Shown here in pieces: positions 9,061 through 60,694 of a stretch of DNA of 64,000 bases. The translations under genes were made by a program, and so were the position numbers. The stretch's first letter is position 1, and the number at the start of each line of letters is the position of its first letter. Where the stretch lies: assembly GCF_006345805.1 (NCBI RefSeq), contig NC_043000.1, forward strand, positions 38,130,001 to 38,194,000, in the 5' to 3' direction. Source of the stretch: Octopus sinensis. Its lineage: Eukaryota. The notes beneath the pieces were generated by a model. That model had not been told where the DNA came from. It did not search any database and saw nothing but the letters and a program-made list of their open reading frames with translations.

Positions 9061-9557
9061 ACGACAGTGTGTGTGCAAATATGTTTCAGTACCGTCATGT
9101 ATATACTTTTGTAGATATGTACAAGTGTGCGTGCATCTATGAGCCTCTATTATTGCTTTATGTGTAGTTGTGGGAAAAAAAGATGGCGTAGAAAATATAG
9201 TGAAAGATATAGGAGCGATACGGTAATGGGTGGAGGGTAGAGAAGGAGAGAATAATATATAGAGAGAAAAAGAAACAGACAGGGATTAGAAGTGAAAGAG
9301 TAAGTCTAGGAAAGAAAGAAAGCACAAAAGAATGAGAGAGAGGGGGAAGAGAGAAAGTGAGGGGAAAAGGAAAAGACAAATAATGAGGAGGAGAGACAGT
9401 GGTAGGGTGTGAGTATTCATATAATTGTTTCTATGTCTGTGGTGTGTGTGTATATATATATATATATGCACGCGTGCGTGTACGTAAATGTGTGTGTGTA
9501 TGTGTGAGTGTGAGTATACATATATATATATATATATAATATATATATATATATATC

Positions 9558-9589
<32 letters not shown>

Positions 9590-9675
9590 CTGTTTCTGAG
9601 TGAGTTGTGTGTGTGATGTATGTATCCATATTTATGTGTGTATATACATGCATGACTCTGTTTGTTTGTATGCTT

Positions 9676-9965
9676 GTGGATGTGGATGTTTGTGAGTCTG
9701 CGTGTCATTGTCAGTATGCATACGTATGTTTCTGTGGATGCGAACGCGTGTGTATGTGAATATGTTTGTGTGTGTGTGTGTGTGTATTTGCGTTGTATGC
9801 GTTTGAAAATGTGTATGTGTTTATGTGTCGATGCTGATTCGGTAAACTTTTGACCAAGTTCGAGTCCAATAGAAAGCGCCAGAGGAGACAGAGCAAGTGG
9901 CTATCGGCTTTCCCCATCACGGTGGAATGCTTGATCTTAGGTGGTCGGGTCCAGTCGAACCACAT
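9676..9965 (-). repeat. About 290-bp segment duplicated in inverted orientation at 13656-13951
   Basis: ORF track gives near-identical peptides (MWFDWTRPPKIKHS...) on opposite strands. Confidence 0.9.
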
Positions 9966-10270
9966 TTATAACACAACCAGAAACATCTCAGTTGACGTTT
10001 TTTCAATTAGTTAACTGTCAGTTGTGAATATGATTCCGAGAGGCCGAGTGCTTTCTCCAACCACTTCGCACACTTAACACTTAAACGCCTCCGTCGTCGT
10101 CGACGACATCATCATCATCATCATCACATCATCACATCATCATCACCATCATCATCATCACCATTGTAACTTCTATTGAACGATGCAAATACAGCTTCAT
10201 TTTCAGTCGTATTATCACACTAGGCATGCATAATGCATACATACATATTTATATACACACACACGACTAT

Positions 10271-14861: not shown

Positions 14862-15075
14862 GCAGAATCGTTAACGCGTCAGACAAAGTGCTAAGCGGCA
14901 TTTCTTTCGGGTCTCTTGCCTTGGGTTCAAATTTGGCCCAGACCGAATTTCAGCCTCTCAGGGACGATGTAGTAGAACTACTAGGGTAGGGGAAATCAAC
15001 TAATCTCTCAAAATTGCTGGTCACGTGCCAGAGTTAGAAAATATTTCATCATATATACATATATATATGTGTGTG

Positions 15076-20886: not shown

Positions 20887-22206
20887 TTGTGCAACGTTAA
20901 CTGCCTTATTCTCTCTCCCTTCCTATCTGATTCCAGTGGCAGGACGAAGTCAAGACTAGAGCTAAGTCGAGATGCAGTGGATGGTCACAGTGTCTCACTA
21001 TGCCCTGTTTGCGTTCCACAACTGGGGGATGGCGGGCCCAGGGTCTTAAATGTAAGGGTATTGCCGGCGGTCGATTGAGAAGGGTCAAAAGCGATTTTGA
21101 CCCTGTGGATTCCATCGGCCGCAACAGATCTGGTTTCTCCAGATTTCTTGAAAATGGCTGGTTGCAGGTATCCGGTGATACTTGAGGGACGTCCCCCCAA
21201 GTGTCACTCGTGCCTGCAGCCAGGCCACATTAAAAGGAACTGCCCCCAGGACCATGGTAAGGTCCTGGAACAGTCACTAGATGCCACCTCCCCTACCCGG
21301 TCAAAGGGAGAGGTGGATGTGGTCGAGGAGGCTTCAGCCTCCTCAACTCAAAAAGGATTAAAAAGGAAGAAGGCGGGCAGCAATAGTTGCCCGCCGAAGG
21401 TACCTAAGGCTTCGGGAGGCGGGGGAGAGTCTCCGGACAAAGCGGAAGAGCTCCACTCTCCCGAAGTCAGGAAGAAAAGAAACAAAAGAAAGAAGAAGAA
21501 CGGGTCATCTCAGCGGGGAGATGATGTGCCGTCTGCATGTCCCGACGTTGTGCCACCCACGGTGGAAGAAACCACCTCCACCCTTAAAGATGATCAATTA
21601 ATTATCTTTTACTATAAAGGCGGTGAGGTGGGAAAAATAGTAGAAGAACATAAAGAGAAAGTAGATATGCCCTTCACACAGGTTCCCGAATGGCCTTCGC
21701 AGATAGCTGTGGAGGTCATAAGGTTTCCCTTGTGGCAAAGGCTTAAAGGATTTGGGGAGGAGTGTCGCATATGACCGGGTGGCCCTTACACGACTTACAT
21801 GTCCTACATGAGTGAGGCATGGGAAATGGTGGGATACAGGAACTCAAGAGGCATTGAAGATAATGATGAATATATCGATGGATATATCGAAGAGTAGGAG
21901 GTGAAAGACCCCCGTTATAGGGTTTGAAACCTCATCTTATTGTATTATTTGTAGTGGTTTATAACCTCAATTGTGTGTTAAAAAAGAAACATGTTAAATA
22001 AGAGGTTTTAGTGTTTCCTTCTTGTAAGAGGTTTGAAACCTCATATTGATTTTTTTTAAATTAAATGTTTTCGAGAAAAATCCAATCGGCGGGTGTTAGG
22101 TTTCGTCTCTCATTTATTCATTCTATTTCATTTTCATTCATTAATGTTTTTGTCCAGCCCGCAAAGCTACACACTCTTTGTACTGTCTATGATTTTATGA
22201 AATAAA
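20887..22206 (+). mobile_element. ORF1-only L1/Tx1-like (half-L1-like) element, copy 1
   Basis: PDFLKMAGCRYPVILEGRPPK-CHSCLQPGHIKRNC (CX2CX4HX4C at 21202-21243), Lys-rich linker, C-terminal domain, hairpin-rich 3'UTR ending GAAATAAA; no endonuclease or RT between ORF1 and the 3' end; 5' boundary uncertain (may extend to about 20500). Confidence 0.75.
21097..21897 (+). pseudogene. LINE ORF1-like (gag-like zinc knuckle) protein, C-terminal part
   Basis: ORF 21097-21774; TGA at 21772 corresponds to TGG in copy 2; frame stays open to TAG at 21895-21897. Confidence 0.8.
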
Positions 22207-22332
22207 GTAGCTTGCTTATCAATCATATGGTTCCGGGTTCAGTCCCACAGCGTGGCACCTATACTCTTCTACTATAGCCACGGGCTGACCAATGCCTTGT
22301 CAGTAGATTTGGTTGAGGGAAACTGAAAGAAG

Positions 22333-22398
<66 letters not shown>

Positions 22399-22640
22399 TG
22401 TATGTGTGTGTGCGCGCGCGCGCCTGTATGTTTGTGAGTCTGTGTTTGTACTCCCAACATCACTTAACAACCGATGCTAGTGTGTTTACGTACCCGTAAC
22501 TAAGCAGTTCGGCAAAAGAGTCTGATAGAATAAGTACTACGTTTACAAAGCATAAGTCCTGGGGTCGATTTGTTCGACTAAACGCGATGCTCCAGCATGG
22601 CCGCAGTCAAATGACTGATACAAGTAAAAGAATAAGAAAA
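22207..22640 (+). mobile_element. Headless SINE-A starting at gtagcttgctt
   Basis: Compared with the intact head gtggtaagtagcttgctt at about 30551. Confidence 0.9.
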
Positions 22641-22703
22641 TATATAGATATATATTCTGAAGGAATACCATCGAATATACATGCACACATACATACATTC
22701 ATA

Positions 22704-24115: not shown

Positions 24116-24218
24116 TAAAGTATCTTATATTCTTTTCAAAATAATGAACTGCAAACAGTACTCGTGGGAATTCCACGGATATTTTGAAAACTGTACAATG
24201 GAATGGTACAATGGAATG

Positions 24219-24530
24219 GTGCGTGGCTTAGTGGTTAGGGCATTCGGCTCACGATCGTATGTTCGTGAGTTCAATTCCCGGCAACGTGTTGTGTTCTTGA
24301 ACAAGACACTTTATTTCACGTCGCTCCAGTTCACTCAGCTGGCAAAGAGGAGTTGTACCTGTATATCAAAGGGCAAGCCTCGTCACAATCTGTGTCACGT
24401 TGACTCTCCGCGAGAACTACGTTAAGGGTACACGTGTCTGTGGAATGCTCAACCACTTGCGCGTTAATTTCACGAGCAAGGTGTTCCATTGATCGTATCA
24501 GCTGTGACCCCTCGTCGTCGTAACCGACGT
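24219..24530 (+). mobile_element. tRNA-derived SINE-C, near full length
   Basis: A box tggcttagtggtt, B box gagttcaattccc, gtgttcttgaacaagacactt. Confidence 0.85.
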
Positions 24531-30534: not shown

Positions 30535-30982
30535 GTCAGGAGTGGCTGTGCGTGGTAAGTAGCTTGCTTGCCAACCACATGGTTCCGGGTTCAGCCCCAC
30601 TGCGTGGTACCTTAGGCAAGTGTCTTTTACTATAGTCTCGAGCCAACCAAAGCCTGGTAAGTGGATTTAGTAGACGGAACTGAAAGAAGCCCATTGTACC
30701 ATTCCCTCATTGATTCAGCTCTCCTGTTTTTAAAAAACATTTTCCTCCTTTTTTACTACTTCCGTCTTTTCAGTATGTGACCTCGTGAAGACGACCTGCA
30801 ATTTTGTTTTCCTCTGTCCTCCCGTCTCGGGATCTTTCTTTCTTTCTCTTATGTTTCCGACGAAGAGCTCCGCTCGAAACGTCATACCCTCCTTCTTCCA
30901 TTTTCCTGAGCGCCTAATAATAATAATACTGTAATTGTTCCACGTGTTGTTGTTTTTTCTGTTTTCCCGTTTGGATTAACCT

Positions 30983-31053
<71 letters not shown>

Positions 31054-31270
31054 TTGTGTGTCTGTGTTTGTCTCCCACCATCGCTTGACAACCAATGTTG
31101 GTGTGTTTACGTCCCAGTAACTTAGCTGTTCGACAAAAGAGACCACTAGGATAAGTACTATGCCCACAAAGAATAAGTTCTGGGGTCGATTTGCTCGACA
31201 ATAGGCGCTGCTCCAACATGGTCGCAGTCAAATGATTGAAACAAATAAAAGAATATAAGAATAAAAGAAT
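30535..31270 (+). mobile_element. SINE-A interrupted by a Penelope-type pLTR fragment (about 30698-30985)
   Basis: 5' half 30535-30697, 3' half about 31040-31270; insert has ccgacga-a-gagc tcc gctc-gaaac-gtc at 30853-30887. Confidence 0.8.
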
Positions 31271-31601
31271 ATATTGAAATCAAAACCAAGCCGTCATCAA
31301 TGGGGACTGGTGATGGATAATGAATGGGTGTCGTGTCTGTCTTTAAACGTATATGGGAATCATTCCTTAATTCCTTACTTCTTGTGGGGACTTAATGCCT
31401 TGCAATATTTACCAAAATATGGCAGTGGCTGTTCTGCTAAGCACCTACAACTTATGACATTCAGAATTGGACAACAGCCATCTTTGAAATTCTATTTGTC
31501 AATCGGGAAATATTTTACTGTTGTTTGTTTGGATTTTGTTTTTCTGTTCTTTGTGTAGAGAAGGACAATACACAATCTGTGTGTGTTTGTGTGTATGTGT
31601 G

Positions 31602-42277: not shown

Positions 42278-43964
42278 TCTCTCTATATATATAAAACTGA
42301 GAATGTGTGTCTGTCTGTCTGTCTGTGTTTCCCTAAAACTTGAGAACTACACAACCAATCTCATTCAAATTTTACACATGCCTTACTTAGTGTCCGTGGA
42401 GTGTCATCGGCAAAAGATCTTTTAACTTTTTGCCTAGGGCGAGCCACAGCAATATCATATCTCTCCACTACGATTCCCTAAAACTTGAGAACTACACAAC
42501 CAATTTCATTCAAATTTTACACATGCCTTACTTAGGGTCCATGTAGTTTCATGGGCAAAAAAATATTCATCTTCTTGCCTAGGGCGAGCCCATAGCAATA
42601 TCATATCTTCTCCACTATTTCAGTATTACGTGTTAAAAGTGAAACAACAACATTTCTCTATTTTATGTCAGATACTTTCACTTTAACAATAAAAATTAGA
42701 GATAATAATAACAATTGAATATAGTAGTAGTAATATTAAAATCAAACTAAAGTATAATATAATCGTAACATAACAAAAGTAAAAATAGCAATTGTATAAA
42801 ATTGCATCAATGACTTGAACTTGAATAAGTGCTTTCACATGAATAGGAATAAATTAAAATAAAATTAGCGTGCAGAAATGGAATAGTCCAGATGGAGGTG
42901 TGCAATACCCTTTACCACGGTTTTCATTAATTATATGCTATGCTATTAGCTAGCAAAGTATCTATAGGAAGTTGGCTGTATGTAATGTCTGTTTTCTCGA
43001 ACAGCGCTTCTACTGAGTACTGTTATTATTATTACTGTTTAACTATTGTTATCATGTTTGTTGGTTCCTCGTAAGGGAAACGTTGTTGTGTTGCATTTGT
43101 TAAATAATTGTAAACTGTAACCCTCCCCCTTTGGGAGAAAGGGCTTTGGTCATTGTTTAAAAATTGAATTGTGTCCCTGTTTGGGGAAATTGACAATATT
43201 TTCACCGTTTACACGGAAGCATTTTTGTTAGAATGCCTTCGATAGAAGAAAGTCCAAAAGTGAATTTCGCTGCAGCCGTCGGCGGGCGCGAACTCTTTAA
43301 AATTAAAATGGAAGGAATAAAAACCTATTTCGGACTGATCACCGACAAAGACAGTGAATCTAGGATAACACCACCAAACGAAATAAAAAATTAAATTAAA
43401 GAAAAGACTATTGTCTATAAAATATAAAATGTAGAGAAAAAAAAATTTGAACACCTGAAGGAAAGCACCATCGAAAAGTGTCTTGGTGTGACTATGAAAG
43501 ATATCTAACCAGAGGCGGTAAATTCGCCACAATAGAAGCAAGGTTCGAGTCAACGGAGCGTGCAAGGGAGTACTCGACTCGAACCTTGCAAATTGGAAAT
43601 ATTTTATTTTTACCTTTATATCTGCAAATTGGAAATATTTTATTTTTACCTTTATATCTGGGACGTCCCGGTAAAAAATTAAATCTCTCCCCAGAAGTAG
43701 AGGTAGGCTGGATTGTAGCCACACTTCTAAACAAGAGGGAGGACAAGATACAATTGATCGAAATTGCAAGAGACGGGCCTACAATTCCACTCTGTTATAT
43801 ATTTTGAGTATTGTTATCACTAGCGATATCAAGATATAACTTTGTATTTTGTATTTTATGTGTAGATGTATATATATAGATGTACATGTAATATGTACAC
43901 ATATATATACACATATATACATGCACTAGCACTATGACCCGGCAACGACGGGTCATACTGCTAG
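42278..43964 (+). mobile_element. Non-autonomous Helitron
   Basis: 5' A|TC..tatatatataaaa with (gtct)n; internal tandem duplication; 3' hairpin tatgacccg/cgggtcata (43933-43957) then CTAG|T. Confidence 0.82.
43233..43795 (+). pseudogene. LINE ORF1-like N-terminal fragment inside the Helitron
   Basis: MPSIEESPKVNFAAAVGG...ARFESTERAREYSTRTLQIGNILFLPLYLGR...VEVGWIVATLL; RRM-like pattern by eye; in-frame 36-bp tandem duplication at 43587-43658. Confidence 0.5.
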
Positions 43965-47029: not shown

Positions 47030-48569
47030 GATCCATATTATGCTCTATGATCATAACTGGCCAAGAATGATGAAACATTAAGCATTAGCTATATGATGAC
47101 ATAACGATCACCTGTCTAGTTTCACTAGCGCCACACCGATGCTTGCGCAAGATATGCAAGATCTTGTTGCAGCACTCTACACACACATACACACATATAT
47201 GTATGGGTGTATATGTGTACAGGGAGGGAGAAAAAGAAGAAGCGTGAGTCTGACACGACCAAAATGAATATATATAAATATCCTCGCGTGTGTGTGTTTG
47301 TGTGTGTGTGTGTACATATATAGCATGCATATGTCTATGCATGCACATGTATGTGTGCGTGCATCTGTGTTCGGAGGTGGATGGATAGGGGTGGATGGGT
47401 TTGAGTGTATTTGAATCTATTAAAATATTTTGAGATATATCGACAGACAAATAGAATTAAAATGATAATTGTATTCATGTTTGCCTACATGCTCCCGTTT
47501 ATTTGTGGTACTTGTAGATGCATAAAGTTGTTTTGTTTTGCATACTGATATTCATAAAGTAACGACAACAACAACAGCAACAAAAACAGGTTACATTTAC
47601 ATTTAAAAGACGAAAACCACATCAATATTACGCATACATCAAACACAAATACAATACAAATATAACATAAATATTCAAATATTCAAAGAACTACCTAAAA
47701 GAAAGGAAAAGGGAAAGAACAATAATCCACATTATCAGCAACAAGGATAACAATAAGCGACAACTAGAAAGAAAATAATATGGACGAAATATAAACAAAC
47801 AATGAGACAAAGTTATAAAGCAGATTTGCTGGAACACGCCTTCTTGCAAGCGTTCCATCATAATAACTCTAACTGAATTAAGAAAGACAAGACCATAGAA
47901 TGGAAATCTCATTTCTTCTTATTCAATTTTCTACAAGTGACAAGCGAACTTTTACCCTTTCCAAGACGGAGTGACATATTCTGAATTTAATTTCCTGTGC
48001 AAATTAGCTGTTGAAATGTCATAATTAAATGTAACAATGTTTTTTTTTTTTTTCACATATTTCTGTTGAGCAGATGCAGCGTCCTTTTGACGGCACTTGG
48101 CCCAAGATGGCTTCTATTCCTCCATAAATTCGCAAATCTTACGATGAAACAGTATTCATTTTCATATTTGCATGTATATATATGTATGTATCTATGCATG
48201 AATGCATGTATGTTTGTATATATAAATATATATATACGCGCTCATGCGCACACACACACATACATATGTATGCATAAATCTTTTTCTGTACACAAACATT
48301 CTCTCACCCATCAACTCATCCATATATCTATTTGTAAATGTGTATGTATATGTATGTCTGTAACTGTAGATATATATGTATGTGTCTAAATGTATGTCCG
48401 TATGCTTTAACTATTTTCCCTCTCGCTGAACTCTATATGCGAGTAAAGCAATATCATCTCTGGCCTTTTATGCACAATTTTATCCGTTTGATCGCATTCT
48501 TTTTCTACGGGATTACATGGTAAGAATACAATCACACTGATGGAAACAGATATATATATATATATATAT

Positions 48570-48775
48570 ATAATTTTTTTGGTTATTTGTTTCAGTCCTT
48601 TGAATGCGGCCATGCTGGAGCACCGCCTGTAGTCGAACAAATCGACGCCAATACTTATTCTCTGTAAGCTGAGCATTTATTTCATCGGTTTCTTTTTGCC
48701 GAACCGCTAAGTTACGGGAGCGTAAACTCATCAGCATCAGTTGTCAAGCGATGGTGGGGGACAAACACACACACA

Positions 48776-48822
<47 letters not shown>

Positions 48823-49000
48823 ATATATATATATATACGATGGGCTTCTTTTAGTTTCCGTCTATCAAATTTACTCACGGGGATTTGGTCGGCCCGAAGC
48901 TATAGTAGAAGACACTTGCTCAAGGTGCCATACAGTGGGACTGAACCCGGAATCATGTGGTTGGTAAGCAAGCTACTTACCACACAGCCACTTCTGCGCC
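48570..49000 (-). mobile_element. SINE-A, full length
   Basis: Head gctacttaccacacagccacttctgcgcc through tail. Confidence 0.92.
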
Positions 49001-58061: not shown

Positions 58062-58469
58062 TAATGTTCTGAATTTCTCGAAATTCTTCTAAATGATATT
58101 TGAATCTAACTGTCATGCATAAGGAATTACCTTCGATGTTCATCTTACTTGTAATTAATTGGTTTCTGATTGTTCTATATTCTTAAACAAATTCGTTCAA
58201 ATCTGAGGGCTTTATTGACATCTGCCTGGATTTTTCAATATATATATATATATATCAAGGGGAATTATTAATAAAGGATTAGTAATCCACGTGAAATGTG
58301 AAATACTTTTTAAATTCTCTGCAGATAAAAGTGCACCATGGCAATAAATAAATAACTAAAAGTCTTGTGATTGATATTCTAGTCCAGGTAATATGAAATC
58401 AAATTTGTAAATCCATGGTTCTAATACCCAGCTGAGATGGGGCTTTCATTTATTCATATATTTATTTTT

Positions 58470-58690
58470 ATCTTTTATTCTTTTATTCTTTTAACTGTTT
58501 CAGTCATTTGACTGCTGCCATGCTGGAGAATCGCATTTAGTCGAGGAAATCGCCCCCAGGACCCTTAGTAAGCCAAGTACTTATTTTATAGGGCTTTTTT
58601 TGCCGAACCGTTAAGTTATGGTGACGTAAACACACTGACATCGGTTGTCAAGCGATGGCGGGGCTGGGGGACAAACAGACAAACAGACAG

Positions 58691-58723
<33 letters not shown>

Positions 58724-58860
58724 CACATACACACACATATATATGTATATATACGACGAAATCCACTCACTTGGTCGGCCCGAGGCTATAACAGTAGACG
58801 TGCCCAATAAACCACACAGTGTGACTAAATCCGGAACCATGTGATTCGTAAACAAGCTAC
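58470..58860 (-). mobile_element. Headless SINE-A starting at gtagcttgttt
   Basis: Joined at 58860/58861 to the 3' end of copy 2. Confidence 0.88.
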
Positions 58861-59914
58861 TTTATTTCAAAAATTTTGCCATAAAGGCATGATACAGAGT
58901 AGCTTGCGGACTGGACAGAAACACTGATGAGGTGAATGATGAAATAAACTGATATTAATGGGAGAAGGCAAAAAACGCCCGCCGATTTTTTGCTTCTCTA
59001 AAACATTATTTTTTTTTTACACAAAAAACAAACCGAGGTATTGAACCTCTTACTTCCTCTTTTACAAGTTTTGGACTTTATAGTCCATTTACAAATTGAG
59101 GCGCTGAGCCTCTTATACACTTAAACATTATAACACTGAGGCTTTTCAACCTTTTGTCAATTTTCCTCCCCAACATCGCTTGTGCCCGTATACTCCGCCA
59201 ACATCCGCGCCTCGTTTAAAACCAAAGCGGGTTCCGAGTCGGTGTCGCCCGGCCACAAGCGATATTCCTCTTTGAGTCTCTCCAGTCTTCGTATCACAGG
59301 CAACGTTATGGCCTCCACAGCTATCTGAGGAGGCCATTCGTGTTCCCGTTTGAAAGTTAAAGGTATTCCCTTATAGTGTTTTTCCGCCACCTTTTCTACC
59401 TCTCGACCTCTGTAGAAGAAGATCAATATGGTTTTTCCAGATTTTTTTGAGGATGGCCGGGTGCAGGTACCCTGTGATTCTTGTTGGTCGCCCCCCCCCA
59501 GGTGTCATCGGTGCCTGGAGCCTGGTCATATAAAAAAGAAACTTTCCTCAGGAACAAAGCAAAGTCCTGGAGCAGTTGACTGAGACTTCTTTGGAAGGAA
59601 CGAAGGCGGCCGAGGAGGCGGTGGACTCCTCAAAGAAGGGCCGCAAGAGGTAGAAGGTGAGCAGTAATGGGTGCTCACCAAAGGATCCTAGGGATGAGGG
59701 AGGGAAGGCGAATCTCCCGTTCACAGAGGAGACGCACCCTCCCCCAGTTGAGAAGAAAAAAATGAGGAAGAGGAAGAAAAACGGAACATTACAGGCAGTC
59801 GGTGATATAGCACCGGAATGTCCCGGAATCTAGTCGGTAGGGTTGTGCCACCGGCAGAAGTGATACCGTTGGCAAGAATTGTGCCGCCAGCGGTAGAATT
59901 GACTACCTCGACCA
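58861..59914 (-). mobile_element. ORF1-only element copy 2 with 5' inversion
   Basis: 58861-59426 minus: C-terminal domain and 3'UTR; 59427-59914 plus: FPDFF..MAGCRYPVILVGRPP..CHRCLEPGHIK and the Lys-rich linker. Confidence 0.8.
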
Positions 59915-59959
59915 CGGACACTAGGATATTGAAAGGTCTGGCAGCTTAACATGTTCACG

Positions 59960-60292: not shown

Positions 60293-60694
60293 AATCTTTT
60301 ATACTCTAGGCACCAGGCCTGAAATTTGGCGGGGAGGGGGAGGGCAGTCGATTAGATCAATCCCAGTACTCAACTGGTACTTAATGTATCGACCTCGAAA
60401 AGAGGAAAGGCAAAGTCGACCTCGGCGGAATTTGAACTTAGGACGTAAAAGCAGACGAAAAACCTATTTCTTTACTACCCACAAAGGGCTGAACACAGAG
60501 AGGACAAACAAGGACAGACACACGAATTAAATCGATTATATCGACCCCAGTGCGTACTGGTACTTAATTTATCGACCCCGAAAGGATGAAAGTCAAAGTC
60601 AACCTCGGCGGAATTTGAACTCAGAACGTAATGGCAGACGAAATACGGCTACGTATTTCGCTCGGCGTGCTAACGGTTCTGCCAGTTCACCGCC
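60293..60694 (-). mobile_element. Dimeric SINE-B
   Basis: Full monomer plus headless monomer, junction at about 60463. Confidence 0.88.

What the first reader, a model, noticed from the sequence alone, without database searches (positions are those of the whole stretch)
20887..22260. ORF1-only retroelement joined at one exact base of a SINE tRNA head, twice
Seen: copy 1 ends ...ttatGAAATAAA|GTAGCTTGCTT (22206/22207). Copy 2 on the minus strand ends ...ttttGAAATAAA|GTAGCTTGTTT (58861/58860). Both continue into SINE-A from the base just after its A-box-like gtggtaa (intact example about 30551). The two elements are strongly diverged (27/60 identical aa in the C-terminal domain by manual ungapped alignment), whereas the attached SINE parts are close to the SINE consensus. 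Neither shows ORF2. Established: Tx1-clade LINEs are often sequence-specific, and ORF1-only 'half-L1' elements exist. Inference: a non-autonomous family that targets tRNA-derived SINE heads (a parasite of a parasite, separating the Pol III A and B boxes). The alternative is a chimeric unit carrying a headless SINE as its 3' end. The missing SINE head is not evident at either 5' flank, which leaves the chimera model open.
Basis: partly seen in the sequence, partly recalled or inferred. Interest (0 to 1): 0.85.

Follow-up and report, generated by a model that had tools for sequence, protein, structure and literature searches.

The report
ORF1-only retroelement fused to headless SINE
Two decayed copies of an octopus mobile element that encodes only a zinc-knuckle, ORF1-like protein join at the same base to a SINE missing its first 24 bases; they are most likely retro-copies of one composite unit, so they do not show that the element repeatedly seeks out SINEs.

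Summary
Copy 1 (+, junction 22206/22207) and copy 2 (-, junction 58861/58860) both end ...TGAAATAAA and continue into the SINE from nt 25. That point lies between its A-box-like (nt 11-21) and B-box-like (nt 54-63) motifs. The other SINE copies in the window keep their heads.

New facts:
- Copy 2's 5' part is inverted, in the layout that twin priming produces.
- Copy 1 is 5'-truncated.
- Neither copy has a SINE head on its 5' side.
- The only database relative is an Octopus sinensis locus. There, an orphan SINE head (nt 1-37) abuts the element's 5' end. This gives a 13-nt overlap (nt 25-37) that looks like a target-site duplication.
- The ORF lineages diverged under purifying selection (dN/dS about 0.33). 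However, the conserved 3' block starts about 180 nt upstream of the junction, with no step at the junction.

Best reading: the element integrated into SINE DNA at least once. The window copies are retro-copies of an RNA made of the element plus the SINE remainder, mobilised through the SINE tail.

Whether the SINE site was hit once or repeatedly is unresolved. Repeated hits would mean true targeting. Interest is moderate: this is a new variant of known kinds (HAL1-like, SVA/3'-transduction-like).

The parts
21022..21897 (+). Copy 1, 5'-truncated ORF1-like reading frame. It is one frame with two in-frame TGA stops at 21076-21078 and 21772-21774. It corresponds to aa 130 to the end of the family protein.
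   Evidence: tblastn of P0001 gives 57% identity over 147 aa, E=4e-46. DNA homology to L001 starts at 21022. Translation. dN/dS versus L001 is 0.33.
21202..21243 (+). CCHC zinc knuckle (CHSCLQPGHIKRNC) of copy 1.
   Evidence: Pfam zf-CCHC, E=3e-4, 21.2 bits against a cut-off of 20.8.
21598..21897 (+). C-terminal domain of copy 1 (IIFYYKGGEV...EWPSQIAVE...). It is family-specific and has no database relatives.
   Evidence: 33% aa identity to copy 2. dN/dS 0.35 versus copy 2. No hits.
21898..22206 (+). 3'UTR of copy 1, ending ...TGAAATAAA. The distal block 22024-22206 is conserved with copy 2. GCAAAGCTAC at 22161-22170 is complementary to the first 9 nt of the SINE part.
   Evidence: Alignment. 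Identity profile: 50-60% proximal, 71-75% distal. The stem appears in the MFE fold.
22207..22645 (+). Headless SINE remainder of copy 1: SINE nt 25 to the end, including the internal (AT)n(TG)n microsatellite at 22340-22412 and the tail ...AAAAGAATAAGAAAATATAT.
   Evidence: Alignments with other SINE copies. TRF.
59426..59925 (+). Copy 2, inverted 5' segment (zinc knuckle plus basic region; equivalent to copy 1 21128 to about 21597). Its coding sense is on the + strand, and it carries frameshifts and stops.
   Evidence: blastn plus/plus, 21128-21274 to 59426-59576. tblastn of P0001 aa 167-273 to 59435-59749. Translation. The outer end near 59925 rests on translated similarity only.
59157..59423 (-). 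Copy 2, direct segment. It holds the C-terminal domain ORF (LIFFYRGREV...GEEN*), with the stop codon at 59159-59157.
   Evidence: blastn plus/minus, 21604-21728 to 59423-59299. Translation.
58861..59156 (-). 3'UTR of copy 2, ending ...TGAAATAAA. GCAAGCTAC at 58907-58899 is complementary to the first 9 nt of the SINE part (58860-58852).
   Evidence: The fold has z=-4.9 and contains the cross-junction stem.
58469..58860 (-). Headless SINE remainder of copy 2 (SINE nt 25 to the end, with the microsatellite and the (AAAGAATA)n tail).
48554..48996 (-). Reference intact SINE copy with its full head, used for numbering. A-box-like TGGCTGTGTGG is at nt 11-21, and B-box-like GGTTCAGTCC at nt 54-63.
30538..31275 (+).

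Best explanation
What it is. This is a non-autonomous non-LTR retroelement. It has roughly 0.5 kb of 5'UTR. Its single ORF, of roughly 420 aa by a splice of L001 and copy 1, has an N-terminal region, one CCHC knuckle, a basic stretch and a family-specific C-terminal domain. A 3'UTR of about 0.3 kb ends ...TGAAATAAA. There is no ORF2.

How the junction arose. The element integrated by target-primed reverse transcription into a SINE copy between SINE nt 24 and 25, duplicating nt 25-37.

How the window copies arose. Transcripts from such a SINE-embedded master read through the element's own terminal AATAAA into the SINE remainder. The LINE that normally mobilises the SINE then reverse-transcribed them from the SINE's 3' tail, (AAAGAATA)n. 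The two window copies are such retro-copies, inserted at unrelated sites. Copy 1 is simply 5'-truncated. Copy 2 is 5'-truncated and inverted by twin priming. Their identical junction is inherited from the master or masters, not re-created at each locus.

Shown:
- the identical junction;
- 5' truncation and inversion;
- absence of SINE heads at both 5' flanks;
- an orphan SINE head plus a 13-nt overlap in the O. sinensis copy;
- purifying selection on the ORF;
- no conservation step at the junction.

Inferred:
- read-through transcription;
- use of the SINE tail by a partner LINE;
- twin priming as the cause of the inversion;
- that the 510 nt between head and ATG in L001 are the element's 5'UTR.

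Open: whether one SINE hit or several founded the lineages.
For: 1. Neither 5' flank has a SINE head. The pattern scan finds only the four strongest of the ordinary heads. Best local alignments of the 37-nt head to both flanks score at or below the shuffle mean. A 5'-truncated in-situ insertion into a SINE should keep nt 1-37 upstream.
2. Copy 2 has the twin-priming layout: flank | rc(B'..A) | B..3' end. B and B' sit next to each other and 2 nt separate the two segments (59423/59426).
3. In L001, SINE nt 1-37 lie directly before the element region, 510 nt upstream of the ATG and in the same orientation. Identity is 25/25 across nt 11-35, and the SINE stops there. The overlap with the window copies' SINE start is GTAGCTTGCTTCC, a normal length for a target-site duplication.
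4. The c1-c2 identity profile is 63% in the C-domain and 50-60% in the proximal 3'UTR. It is 71-75% in the distal 3'UTR and 70-72% in the SINE head part. The SINE tail is 80% identical. The conserved 3' module therefore spans the junction.
5. A 9-nt stem between the 3'UTR and the first SINE bases appears in the MFE fold of both copies.
6. All three junction-side SINE sequences carry T at nt 26. Only 2 of 6 ordinary copies do.
7. Both copies carry the complete SINE remainder up to its natural tail.
Against: - No target-site duplications could be found around either composite. The copies are old and copy 1's 5' end is uncertain.
- The SINE parts of copies 1 and 2 are no closer to each other than to ordinary SINE copies, and they share no excess of derived sites. 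Descent neither requires nor gains support from this.
- ORF lineages are deeply diverged at synonymous sites (dS 0.74 to about 1.3), while the SINE part differs by only about 0.23. Under a single founding event the whole 3' module must have been strongly constrained.
- The L001 copy has few disabling mutations yet still carries the SINE's natural 5' end. A fresh insertion into a SINE explains that more simply than a full-length retro-copy does.
- Nt 36 differs between L001's 5' copy (C) and the window copies (A).
- Only three copies in total could be examined.
Confidence: 0.6

Rival explanations
1. Recurrent in-situ site-specific insertion. Each copy, including the two in the window, is a separate integration into a resident SINE at nt 24/25. 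A sequence-specific endonuclease from an unseen autonomous partner would direct it. Pairing of the 3'UTR 9-mer with the target might help.
For: The junction is identical in three diverged lineages. L001 shows the SINE's natural 5' end plus a 13-nt overlap. ORF dS (0.74-1.3) is much larger than SINE-part divergence. SINE parts are star-like with ordinary copies. Nt 36 differs between L001 and the window copies. The site GGTAA|GTAGC is unlike the AT-rich sites where ordinary SINE copies sit. Tx1-clade LINEs with strict targets are documented (PMC4494074).
Against: Both window copies lack the head that a 5'-truncated or twin-primed in-situ insertion should retain. There is no conservation step at the junction. 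No ORF2 or partner was found in the window. The element's terminal GAAATAAA resembles the SINE's own tail unit, which suggests the same non-specific partner.
Confidence: 0.15
2. Recurrent template switching during reverse transcription. The partner reverse transcriptase starts on SINE RNA and stalls reproducibly in the D-loop-equivalent region near nt 25, because of structure or a modified base. It then jumps to the exact 3' end of the ORF-element RNA, as in U6-L1 chimeras.
For: This explains the absent heads. It explains why the 5' partner is joined at its precise 3' end in both copies. It explains SINE parts that look like ordinary SINE sequence. RT template switching that makes chimeric retro-copies (U6-L1 chimeras) is an established mechanism; I recall this and only retrieved the titles and abstracts of PMC4476161 and PMC13174262.
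Against: It needs an unproven hard stop at one base. It does not explain L001's orphan head, whose end overlaps the junction by exactly a TSD-like 13 nt. There is no variable A-tract at the junction. The conserved cross-junction stem and the conserved module spanning the junction fit inheritance better.
Confidence: 0.1
3. No family-level phenomenon. The two loci are either a segmental duplication of one accidental arrangement or a chance coincidence.
For: Only two copies are present in the window.
Against: The flanks on both sides are unrelated. One copy is inverted and truncated differently. The copies differ by 20-40% under purifying selection. A third lineage exists in O. sinensis.
Confidence: 0.02

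Closest known systems
HAL1 ('half-L1') elements of mammals
   Same: A non-autonomous LINE derivative that keeps only ORF1 and depends on an autonomous partner (PMC5753468). Here there is a single ORF1-like ORF under purifying selection, no ORF2, and 5'-truncated copies.
   Different: HAL1 keeps an L1 3' end and poly(A). Here the 3' end is a captured SINE remainder. The ORF has one CCHC knuckle and an unrelated C-terminal domain. The parental LINE is unknown.
SVA and L1/SVA 3' transduction (composite or read-through retro-copies)
   Same: A unit assembled from unrelated modules, or a downstream flank carried along by read-through past a weak AATAAA, then mobilised in trans. The hallmarks match: 5' truncation and twin-priming inversions.
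   Different: SVA is non-coding. Transduced flanks are normally arbitrary and lineage-specific. Here the carried piece is the rest of the SINE that the element split, and it probably supplies the recognition tail.
Target-specific Tx1-clade LINEs (Tx1 in Tx1D, Keno in U2 snRNA genes, Tx1-Mar in Mariner-N4_AMi)
   Same: Integration at one fixed position of another repeat or small-RNA-type sequence (PMC4494074). L001 shows target sequence on the 5' side with a fixed overlap.
   Different: Those elements are autonomous and have target sequence on both sides of essentially every copy. Here there is no ORF2, and 2 of 3 copies lack the target's 5' part.
U6-L1 and other template-switch chimeric retro-copies
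   Same: Two RNAs are joined head to tail, the 5' partner at its exact 3' end.
   Different: In those chimeras the 3' partner's break point varies from copy to copy. Here it is the same base, and a TSD-like overlap is seen at a 5' junction.

Membership tests
LINE ORF1 protein (RRM plus CCHC type) | CCHC zinc knuckle after the nucleic-acid-binding domain | tested here: met
   Pfam zf-CCHC, E=3e-4, 21.2 bits against a cut-off of 20.8, for copy 1. The knuckle is degenerate in P0001.
LINE ORF1 protein (RRM plus CCHC type) | RRM-like fold upstream of the knuckle | tested here: inconclusive
   The AlphaFold2 single-sequence model of P0001 has mean pLDDT 38.6. There are no Pfam or PDB sequence hits.
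LINE ORF1 protein (RRM plus CCHC type) | Homologues sit directly upstream of an APE/RT ORF2 in autonomous elements | tested here: met
   The weak homologue P0008 (E=1.1e-5) lies upstream of Exo_endo_phos, RVT_1 and zf-RVT ORFs in L003. The similarity covers only about 60 aa around the knuckle.
HAL1-like ORF1-only non-autonomous LINE derivative | ORF1 present and ORF2 absent in the unit | tested here: met
   About 310 nt separate the stop codon from the junction. No ORF of 130 aa or more in the window looks like an endonuclease or reverse transcriptase, though none was domain-scanned.
HAL1-like ORF1-only non-autonomous LINE derivative | An autonomous parent LINE shares ORF1 and the UTRs | not testable with these tools
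   No cephalopod genome or Repbase/Dfam search was available. The protein databases hold only P0001.
Site-specific non-LTR retrotransposon (Tx1/R1/R2-like) | Target sequence present on both sides of the copies | tested here: not met
   3' side: 2 of 2 window copies. 5' side: 0 of 2 window copies. One of one in L001.
Site-specific non-LTR retrotransposon (Tx1/R1/R2-like) | Own sequence-specific endonuclease/RT, or a demonstrable specific partner | tested here: not met
   The element has no ORF2, and no candidate was found in the window. A partner elsewhere in the genome could not be searched.
Site-specific non-LTR retrotransposon (Tx1/R1/R2-like) | Membership in the Tx1 clade by RT phylogeny | not testable with these tools
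   No RT sequence belongs to this element.
Composite or 3'-transduction-type retro-copy | Unrelated modules joined at a fixed point and carried to unrelated loci | tested here: met
   The junction is identical and the flanks are unrelated.
Composite or 3'-transduction-type retro-copy | Target-site duplication flanking the whole composite | tested here: inconclusive
   No exact direct repeat (8 nt for copy 1, 7 nt for copy 2) or near-match was found. The copies are about 10-20% decayed.
Composite or 3'-transduction-type retro-copy | TPRT hallmarks (5' truncation, twin-priming inversion) | tested here: met
tRNA-derived SINE (SINE2) | Internal Pol III A and B boxes at the 5' end | tested here: met
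   TGGCTGTGTGG at nt 11-21 and GGTTCAGTCC at nt 54-63, read from the alignment. This is motif level only.
tRNA-derived SINE (SINE2) | Head recognisable as a tRNA | tested here: not met
   ARAGORN calls none of the heads. The Rfam tRNA model gives no match even at E up to 10.

The most novel reading that the evidence does not exclude
The element really is a repeat-targeting 'parasite of a parasite'. Different, long-diverged ORF1-only lineages have each integrated at SINE nt 24/25, between the A and B boxes. A sequence-specific partner would guide them. The conserved 9-nt 3'UTR segment complementary to the first SINE bases after the cut might also contribute. The headless window copies would be secondary read-through retro-copies of such SINE-embedded masters.
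Probability: 0.3. Interest if true: 0.7.

Novelty: new variant of a known kind. Interest (0 to 1): 0.42.

Why it matters
If the composite reading holds, this is a clear invertebrate example of a protein-coding, ORF1-only retroelement that borrows a SINE's 3' module to be mobilised. That would combine the HAL1 strategy with the SVA/3'-transduction strategy. It would also show that a SINE body can serve as a portable retrotransposition signal for a 2-kb coding RNA.

The ORF is under purifying selection although no ORF2 is present. This raises the question of what an ORF1-only element gains from its protein.

If repeated targeting is confirmed instead, it would be a non-autonomous element with site specificity for a SINE promoter region. 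Each hit would inactivate the SINE copy.

A practical point: the annotated O. sinensis gene LOC115225585 is a decayed copy of this element.

Tried and rejected
- Protein homology. The word-index search with the copy 1 conceptual protein found nothing. The search with P0001 found only itself. The search with a C-domain alignment found nothing. The exhaustive phmmer search found one true relative, P0001, plus generic zinc-knuckle hits. More genomic copies could therefore not be collected.
- An exact look-up of the copy 1 ORF found no record.
- The metagenome scan with the 21-nt junction gave five hits. All are 21-26-nt chance matches with no extended homology.
- L002, a distant relative from a Logan contig, has no C-domain or SINE.
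- The structure prediction of P0001 was too poor to use (pLDDT 38.6), so no fold search was run.
- TSD searches around both copies found nothing.
- SINE head searches at both 5' flanks, and searches for element 5' sequence in those flanks, found nothing above chance.
- Shared derived sites and pairwise distances in the SINE parts of copies 1 and 2 do not differ from other SINE pairs. This supports neither model.
- Branch-length comparison of the ORF and SINE parts was abandoned as a clock once dN/dS showed the ORF was constrained.
- Extension of copy 1 upstream of 21022 ('LFSLPSY', 'VEMQW') is not significant.
- A possible continuation of the SINE beyond nt 37 in L001 adds no alignment score.
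- The SINE tail fragment at L001 20700-20775 is an unrelated 5'-truncated SINE.
Full report
**1. What is in the sequence**

The window is octopus DNA. The only database relative of the ORF is an Octopus sinensis protein, P0001 (LOC115225585). It is encoded on CM016886.1, fetched as locus L001.

Copy 1 (+ strand) ends ...TTATGAAATAAA at 22206 and continues GTAGCTTGCTT... from 22207. Copy 2 (- strand) ends ...TTTTGAAATAAA at 58861 and continues GTAGCTTGTTT... from 58860.

The sequences on both sides of the junction are homologous between the copies. Window 22024-22650 matches 59053-58469 with E=1.5e-76, and the ORF pieces match at E=1e-21 and 9e-10. The outer flanks are unrelated.

The downstream sequence is a SINE with three parts:
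- a head part of about 130 nt;
- an internal (TA)n(TG)n microsatellite;
- a tail of about 220 nt ending in (AAAGAATA)n.

Numbering from the first G of GGCGCAGG..., an A-box-like TGGCTGTGTGG occupies nt 11-21 and a B-box-like GGTTCAGTCC occupies nt 54-63. Both ORF-linked copies start at nt 25, with 2 nt ('AA') of ambiguity.

Five other copies in the window keep the head. A sixth, at 14864 (-), aligns only from about nt 29 and its head is unclear. Neither ARAGORN nor Rfam recognises the head as a tRNA. 'tRNA head' therefore rests on the box motifs alone.

**2. Anatomy of the element**

With P0001 as a guide, the family ORF is roughly 420 aa by a splice of L001 and copy 1. It has an N-terminal region, one CCHC knuckle (Pfam E=3e-4), a basic low-complexity stretch and a C-terminal domain with no relatives anywhere.

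A weak homologue of the knuckle region, P0008, lies directly upstream of APE, RT and zf-RVT ORFs in a LINE (L003). This supports the label 'ORF1-like'. An RRM fold could not be shown.

There is no room for an ORF2. About 310 nt of 3'UTR separate the stop codon (21895-21897 in copy 1; 59159-57 in copy 2) from the junction. No ORF of 130 aa or more in the window looks like an endonuclease or reverse transcriptase, though none was domain-scanned.

Copy 1 is demonstrably homologous only from 21022, which corresponds to aa 130 of P0001. An extension towards about 20908 is not above shuffles. Its frame carries two TGG-to-TGA stops (21076, 21772).

Copy 2 is rearranged. The stretch equivalent to copy 1 21128 to about 21597 lies inverted, on the + strand, at 59426 to about 59925. 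The stretch equivalent to 21604 onward runs on the - strand from 59423.

Read along the element strand, the order in copy 2 is flank | rc(B'..A) | B..3' end. B' and B are adjacent, and 2 nt lie between the segments. This is the layout that twin priming produces during target-primed reverse transcription. A later inversion cannot be excluded, but it would need a breakpoint that coincides with the copy's 5' end.

**3. The missing head**

Neither 5' flank contains a SINE head. A 17-nt head pattern with up to 3 mismatches finds only the four strongest of the ordinary heads. The best local alignments of the 37-nt head to either flank score at or below the shuffle mean. Neither flank contains more element sequence either.

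L001 does show the head. Positions 9453-9490 read AGGCTGAGGCATGGCTGTGTGGTAAGTAGCTTGCTTCC, which is SINE nt 1-37, with 25/25 identity across nt 11-35. The SINE then stops, and 510 nt later the ATG of the ORF follows on the same strand.

SINE heads occur about six times per 64 kb on both strands, and at least five of the six ordinary copies continue from the head into a SINE body. An orphan head in this position and orientation is therefore very unlikely to be accidental. By my estimate, the chance of any head within 600 nt in the same orientation is well under 0.03.

The head ends at nt 37, and the window copies resume at nt 25. The 13-nt overlap, GTAGCTTGCTTCC, has the size of a target-site duplication. 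I take this as evidence that the element integrated into SINE DNA by TPRT at least once.

There are caveats. The L001 copy has a frameshift and breaks off at about 10975, so its own 3' junction is lost. No second full-length copy confirms that 9491-10000 is the element's 5'UTR.

**4. One hit inherited, or many hits?**

I tested this in several ways.

(a) The ORFs did diverge as functional genes.
- dN/dS is 0.33 (95% CI 0.20-0.49; dS 0.74) for copy 1 versus L001.
- dN/dS is 0.35 (0.16-0.65; dS about 1-1.3) for the C-domain of copy 1 versus copy 2.
- Neutral simulations give a median of 0.72-0.94. Only one simulation setting (kappa 4) gave a replicate as low as 0.34, and none fell below 0.33.

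(b) The SINE parts are ordinary.
- They lie 12-25% from a window consensus, like other copies.
- They are 20-27% from each other, no closer than to other copies.
- They share no excess of derived sites.

(c) An internal control removes the contrast. The element's own distal 3'UTR (22024-22206) must be inherited with the ORF. It is 71-75% identical between the copies, the same as the adjoining SINE head part (70-72%). The C-domain is 63% identical and the proximal 3'UTR 50-60%. The step in conservation lies about 180 nt upstream of the junction, not at it.

So the 3' module, distal UTR plus SINE remainder, behaves as one conserved unit. The SINE part's conservation therefore cannot count as evidence for independent acquisition.

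(d) A 9-nt stem links the 3'UTR to the first SINE bases: GCAA(A)GCUAC pairs with GUAGCUUG(C/U). It appears in the MFE fold of both copies. The fold z-score is -4.9 for copy 2 and 0 for copy 1.

(e) All three junction-side SINE sequences carry T at nt 26, which only 2 of 6 ordinary copies have.

Some points favour repeated hits:
- L001 has few disabling mutations, yet it carries the SINE's natural 5' end.
- Nt 36 is C in L001 and A in the window copies.
- The site GGTAA|GTAGC is unlike the AT-rich sites where ordinary SINE copies sit.

**5. Conclusion on mechanism**

The two window copies are best explained as retro-copies of a composite RNA, the element plus the SINE remainder. This RNA was reverse-transcribed from the SINE's tail by the SINE's partner LINE and inserted at unrelated sites. 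One copy was 5'-truncated and the other twin-primed. This explains the identical junction, the absent heads and the conserved module spanning the junction (confidence about 0.6).

The junction itself stems from a real TPRT insertion into a SINE, as the L001 overlap indicates. These data do not decide whether the founding insertion happened once, with the 3' module then kept by selection, or repeatedly. Repeated hits would make the masters truly site-specific. I put repeated targeting at about 0.3.

Pure in-situ targeting for the window copies (0.15) conflicts with the missing heads. Recurrent template switching at a hard stop (0.1) does not explain L001's overlap. Chance or segmental duplication is excluded.

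**6. Comparison with known systems**

- It works like HAL1: ORF1-only and non-autonomous (PMC5753468).
- It works like SVA or L1 3'-transduction events: composite or read-through units mobilised in trans.
- It resembles target-specific Tx1-clade LINEs (PMC4494074) only at the L001 5' junction. It fails that family's defining features here. It has no ORF2, and target sequence is missing on the 5' side in 2 of 3 copies.
- Its RT clade cannot be assessed.
- Repbase and Dfam could not be consulted.

I rate it a new variant of known kinds, of moderate interest. It is a coding, selectively maintained ORF1-only element that uses a split SINE as its 3' module.

**7. Limits**

Only three copies were available: two in the window and one in L001. 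No cephalopod genome could be searched by DNA. TSDs were not recoverable. The metagenome scan returned only chance matches. The decisive tests are listed under next steps: genome-wide junction tabulation, empty-site comparison, and joint phylogeny of the ORF and the SINE remainder.

Noticed in passing
window 43230-43800 (+): A third ORF1-like fragment from a more distant paralogous family. It matches P0001 aa 60-126 at 32% identity (E=1e-5). It contains an internal tandem duplication of the 'LQIGNILFLPLY' stretch. It breaks off into microsatellite sequence, with no ORF2 or SINE junction.
   Followed up: partly
window 22161-22170 with 22207-22215; 58907-58899 with 58860-58852 (-): A 9-nt segment of the 3'UTR, GCAA(A)GCTAC, sits about 40-45 nt upstream of the junction. 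It is complementary to the first 9 nt of the SINE remainder in both copies and forms a stem in both MFE folds. Its function is unknown. It might be a structural substitute for the lost head, or a target-pairing segment.
   Followed up: partly
window 21925-22045 (+) and 59135-59020 (-): The 3'UTRs carry repeated short hairpins of the form GAGGnnnnnnnCCTC. Examples are GAGGTTTGAAACCTC in copy 1, and GAGGCTCAGCGCCTC and GAGGTTCAATACCTC in copy 2. The fifth stem pair changes on both sides between versions (T-A versus C-G). This may be a retrotransposition signal.
   Followed up: no
window 24216-24288 (+): ARAGORN calls a tRNA-Val (CAC) here, but no Rfam family reaches its gathering score anywhere in the window. 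It may be a tRNA pseudogene or the head of another SINE family.
   Followed up: no
window 60300-60600 (-): Two adjacent copies of a different short repeat (...CTTTCGGGGTCGATAAATTAAGTACCAGT...) lie just upstream of copy 2. This is probably another SINE family.
   Followed up: no
window SINE copies at 658, 14864(-), 22922(-), 45216(-) versus 30538, 48996(-), copies 1 and 2; L001 9453-9490: The SINE falls into two variants at nt 26 (AAGAAGC versus AAGTAGC). All sequences linked to the ORF element are of the T type.
   Followed up: partly
L001 10001-10975 (Octopus sinensis CM016886.1): The annotated gene LOC115225585 ('uncharacterized protein') is a decayed copy of this retroelement. It has a frameshift in an A-run at about 10840, the reading frame continues in another phase, and the copy breaks off at about 10975 inside the C-terminal domain. 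It lies within the range of another called gene.
   Followed up: yes
L003 2417-7037: In an ENA assembly contig of unknown organism, a LINE carries an ORF1 with several CCHC knuckles (P0008), followed by APE, RT and zf-RVT ORFs. It is the nearest autonomous-type relative found for the knuckle region.
   Followed up: partly
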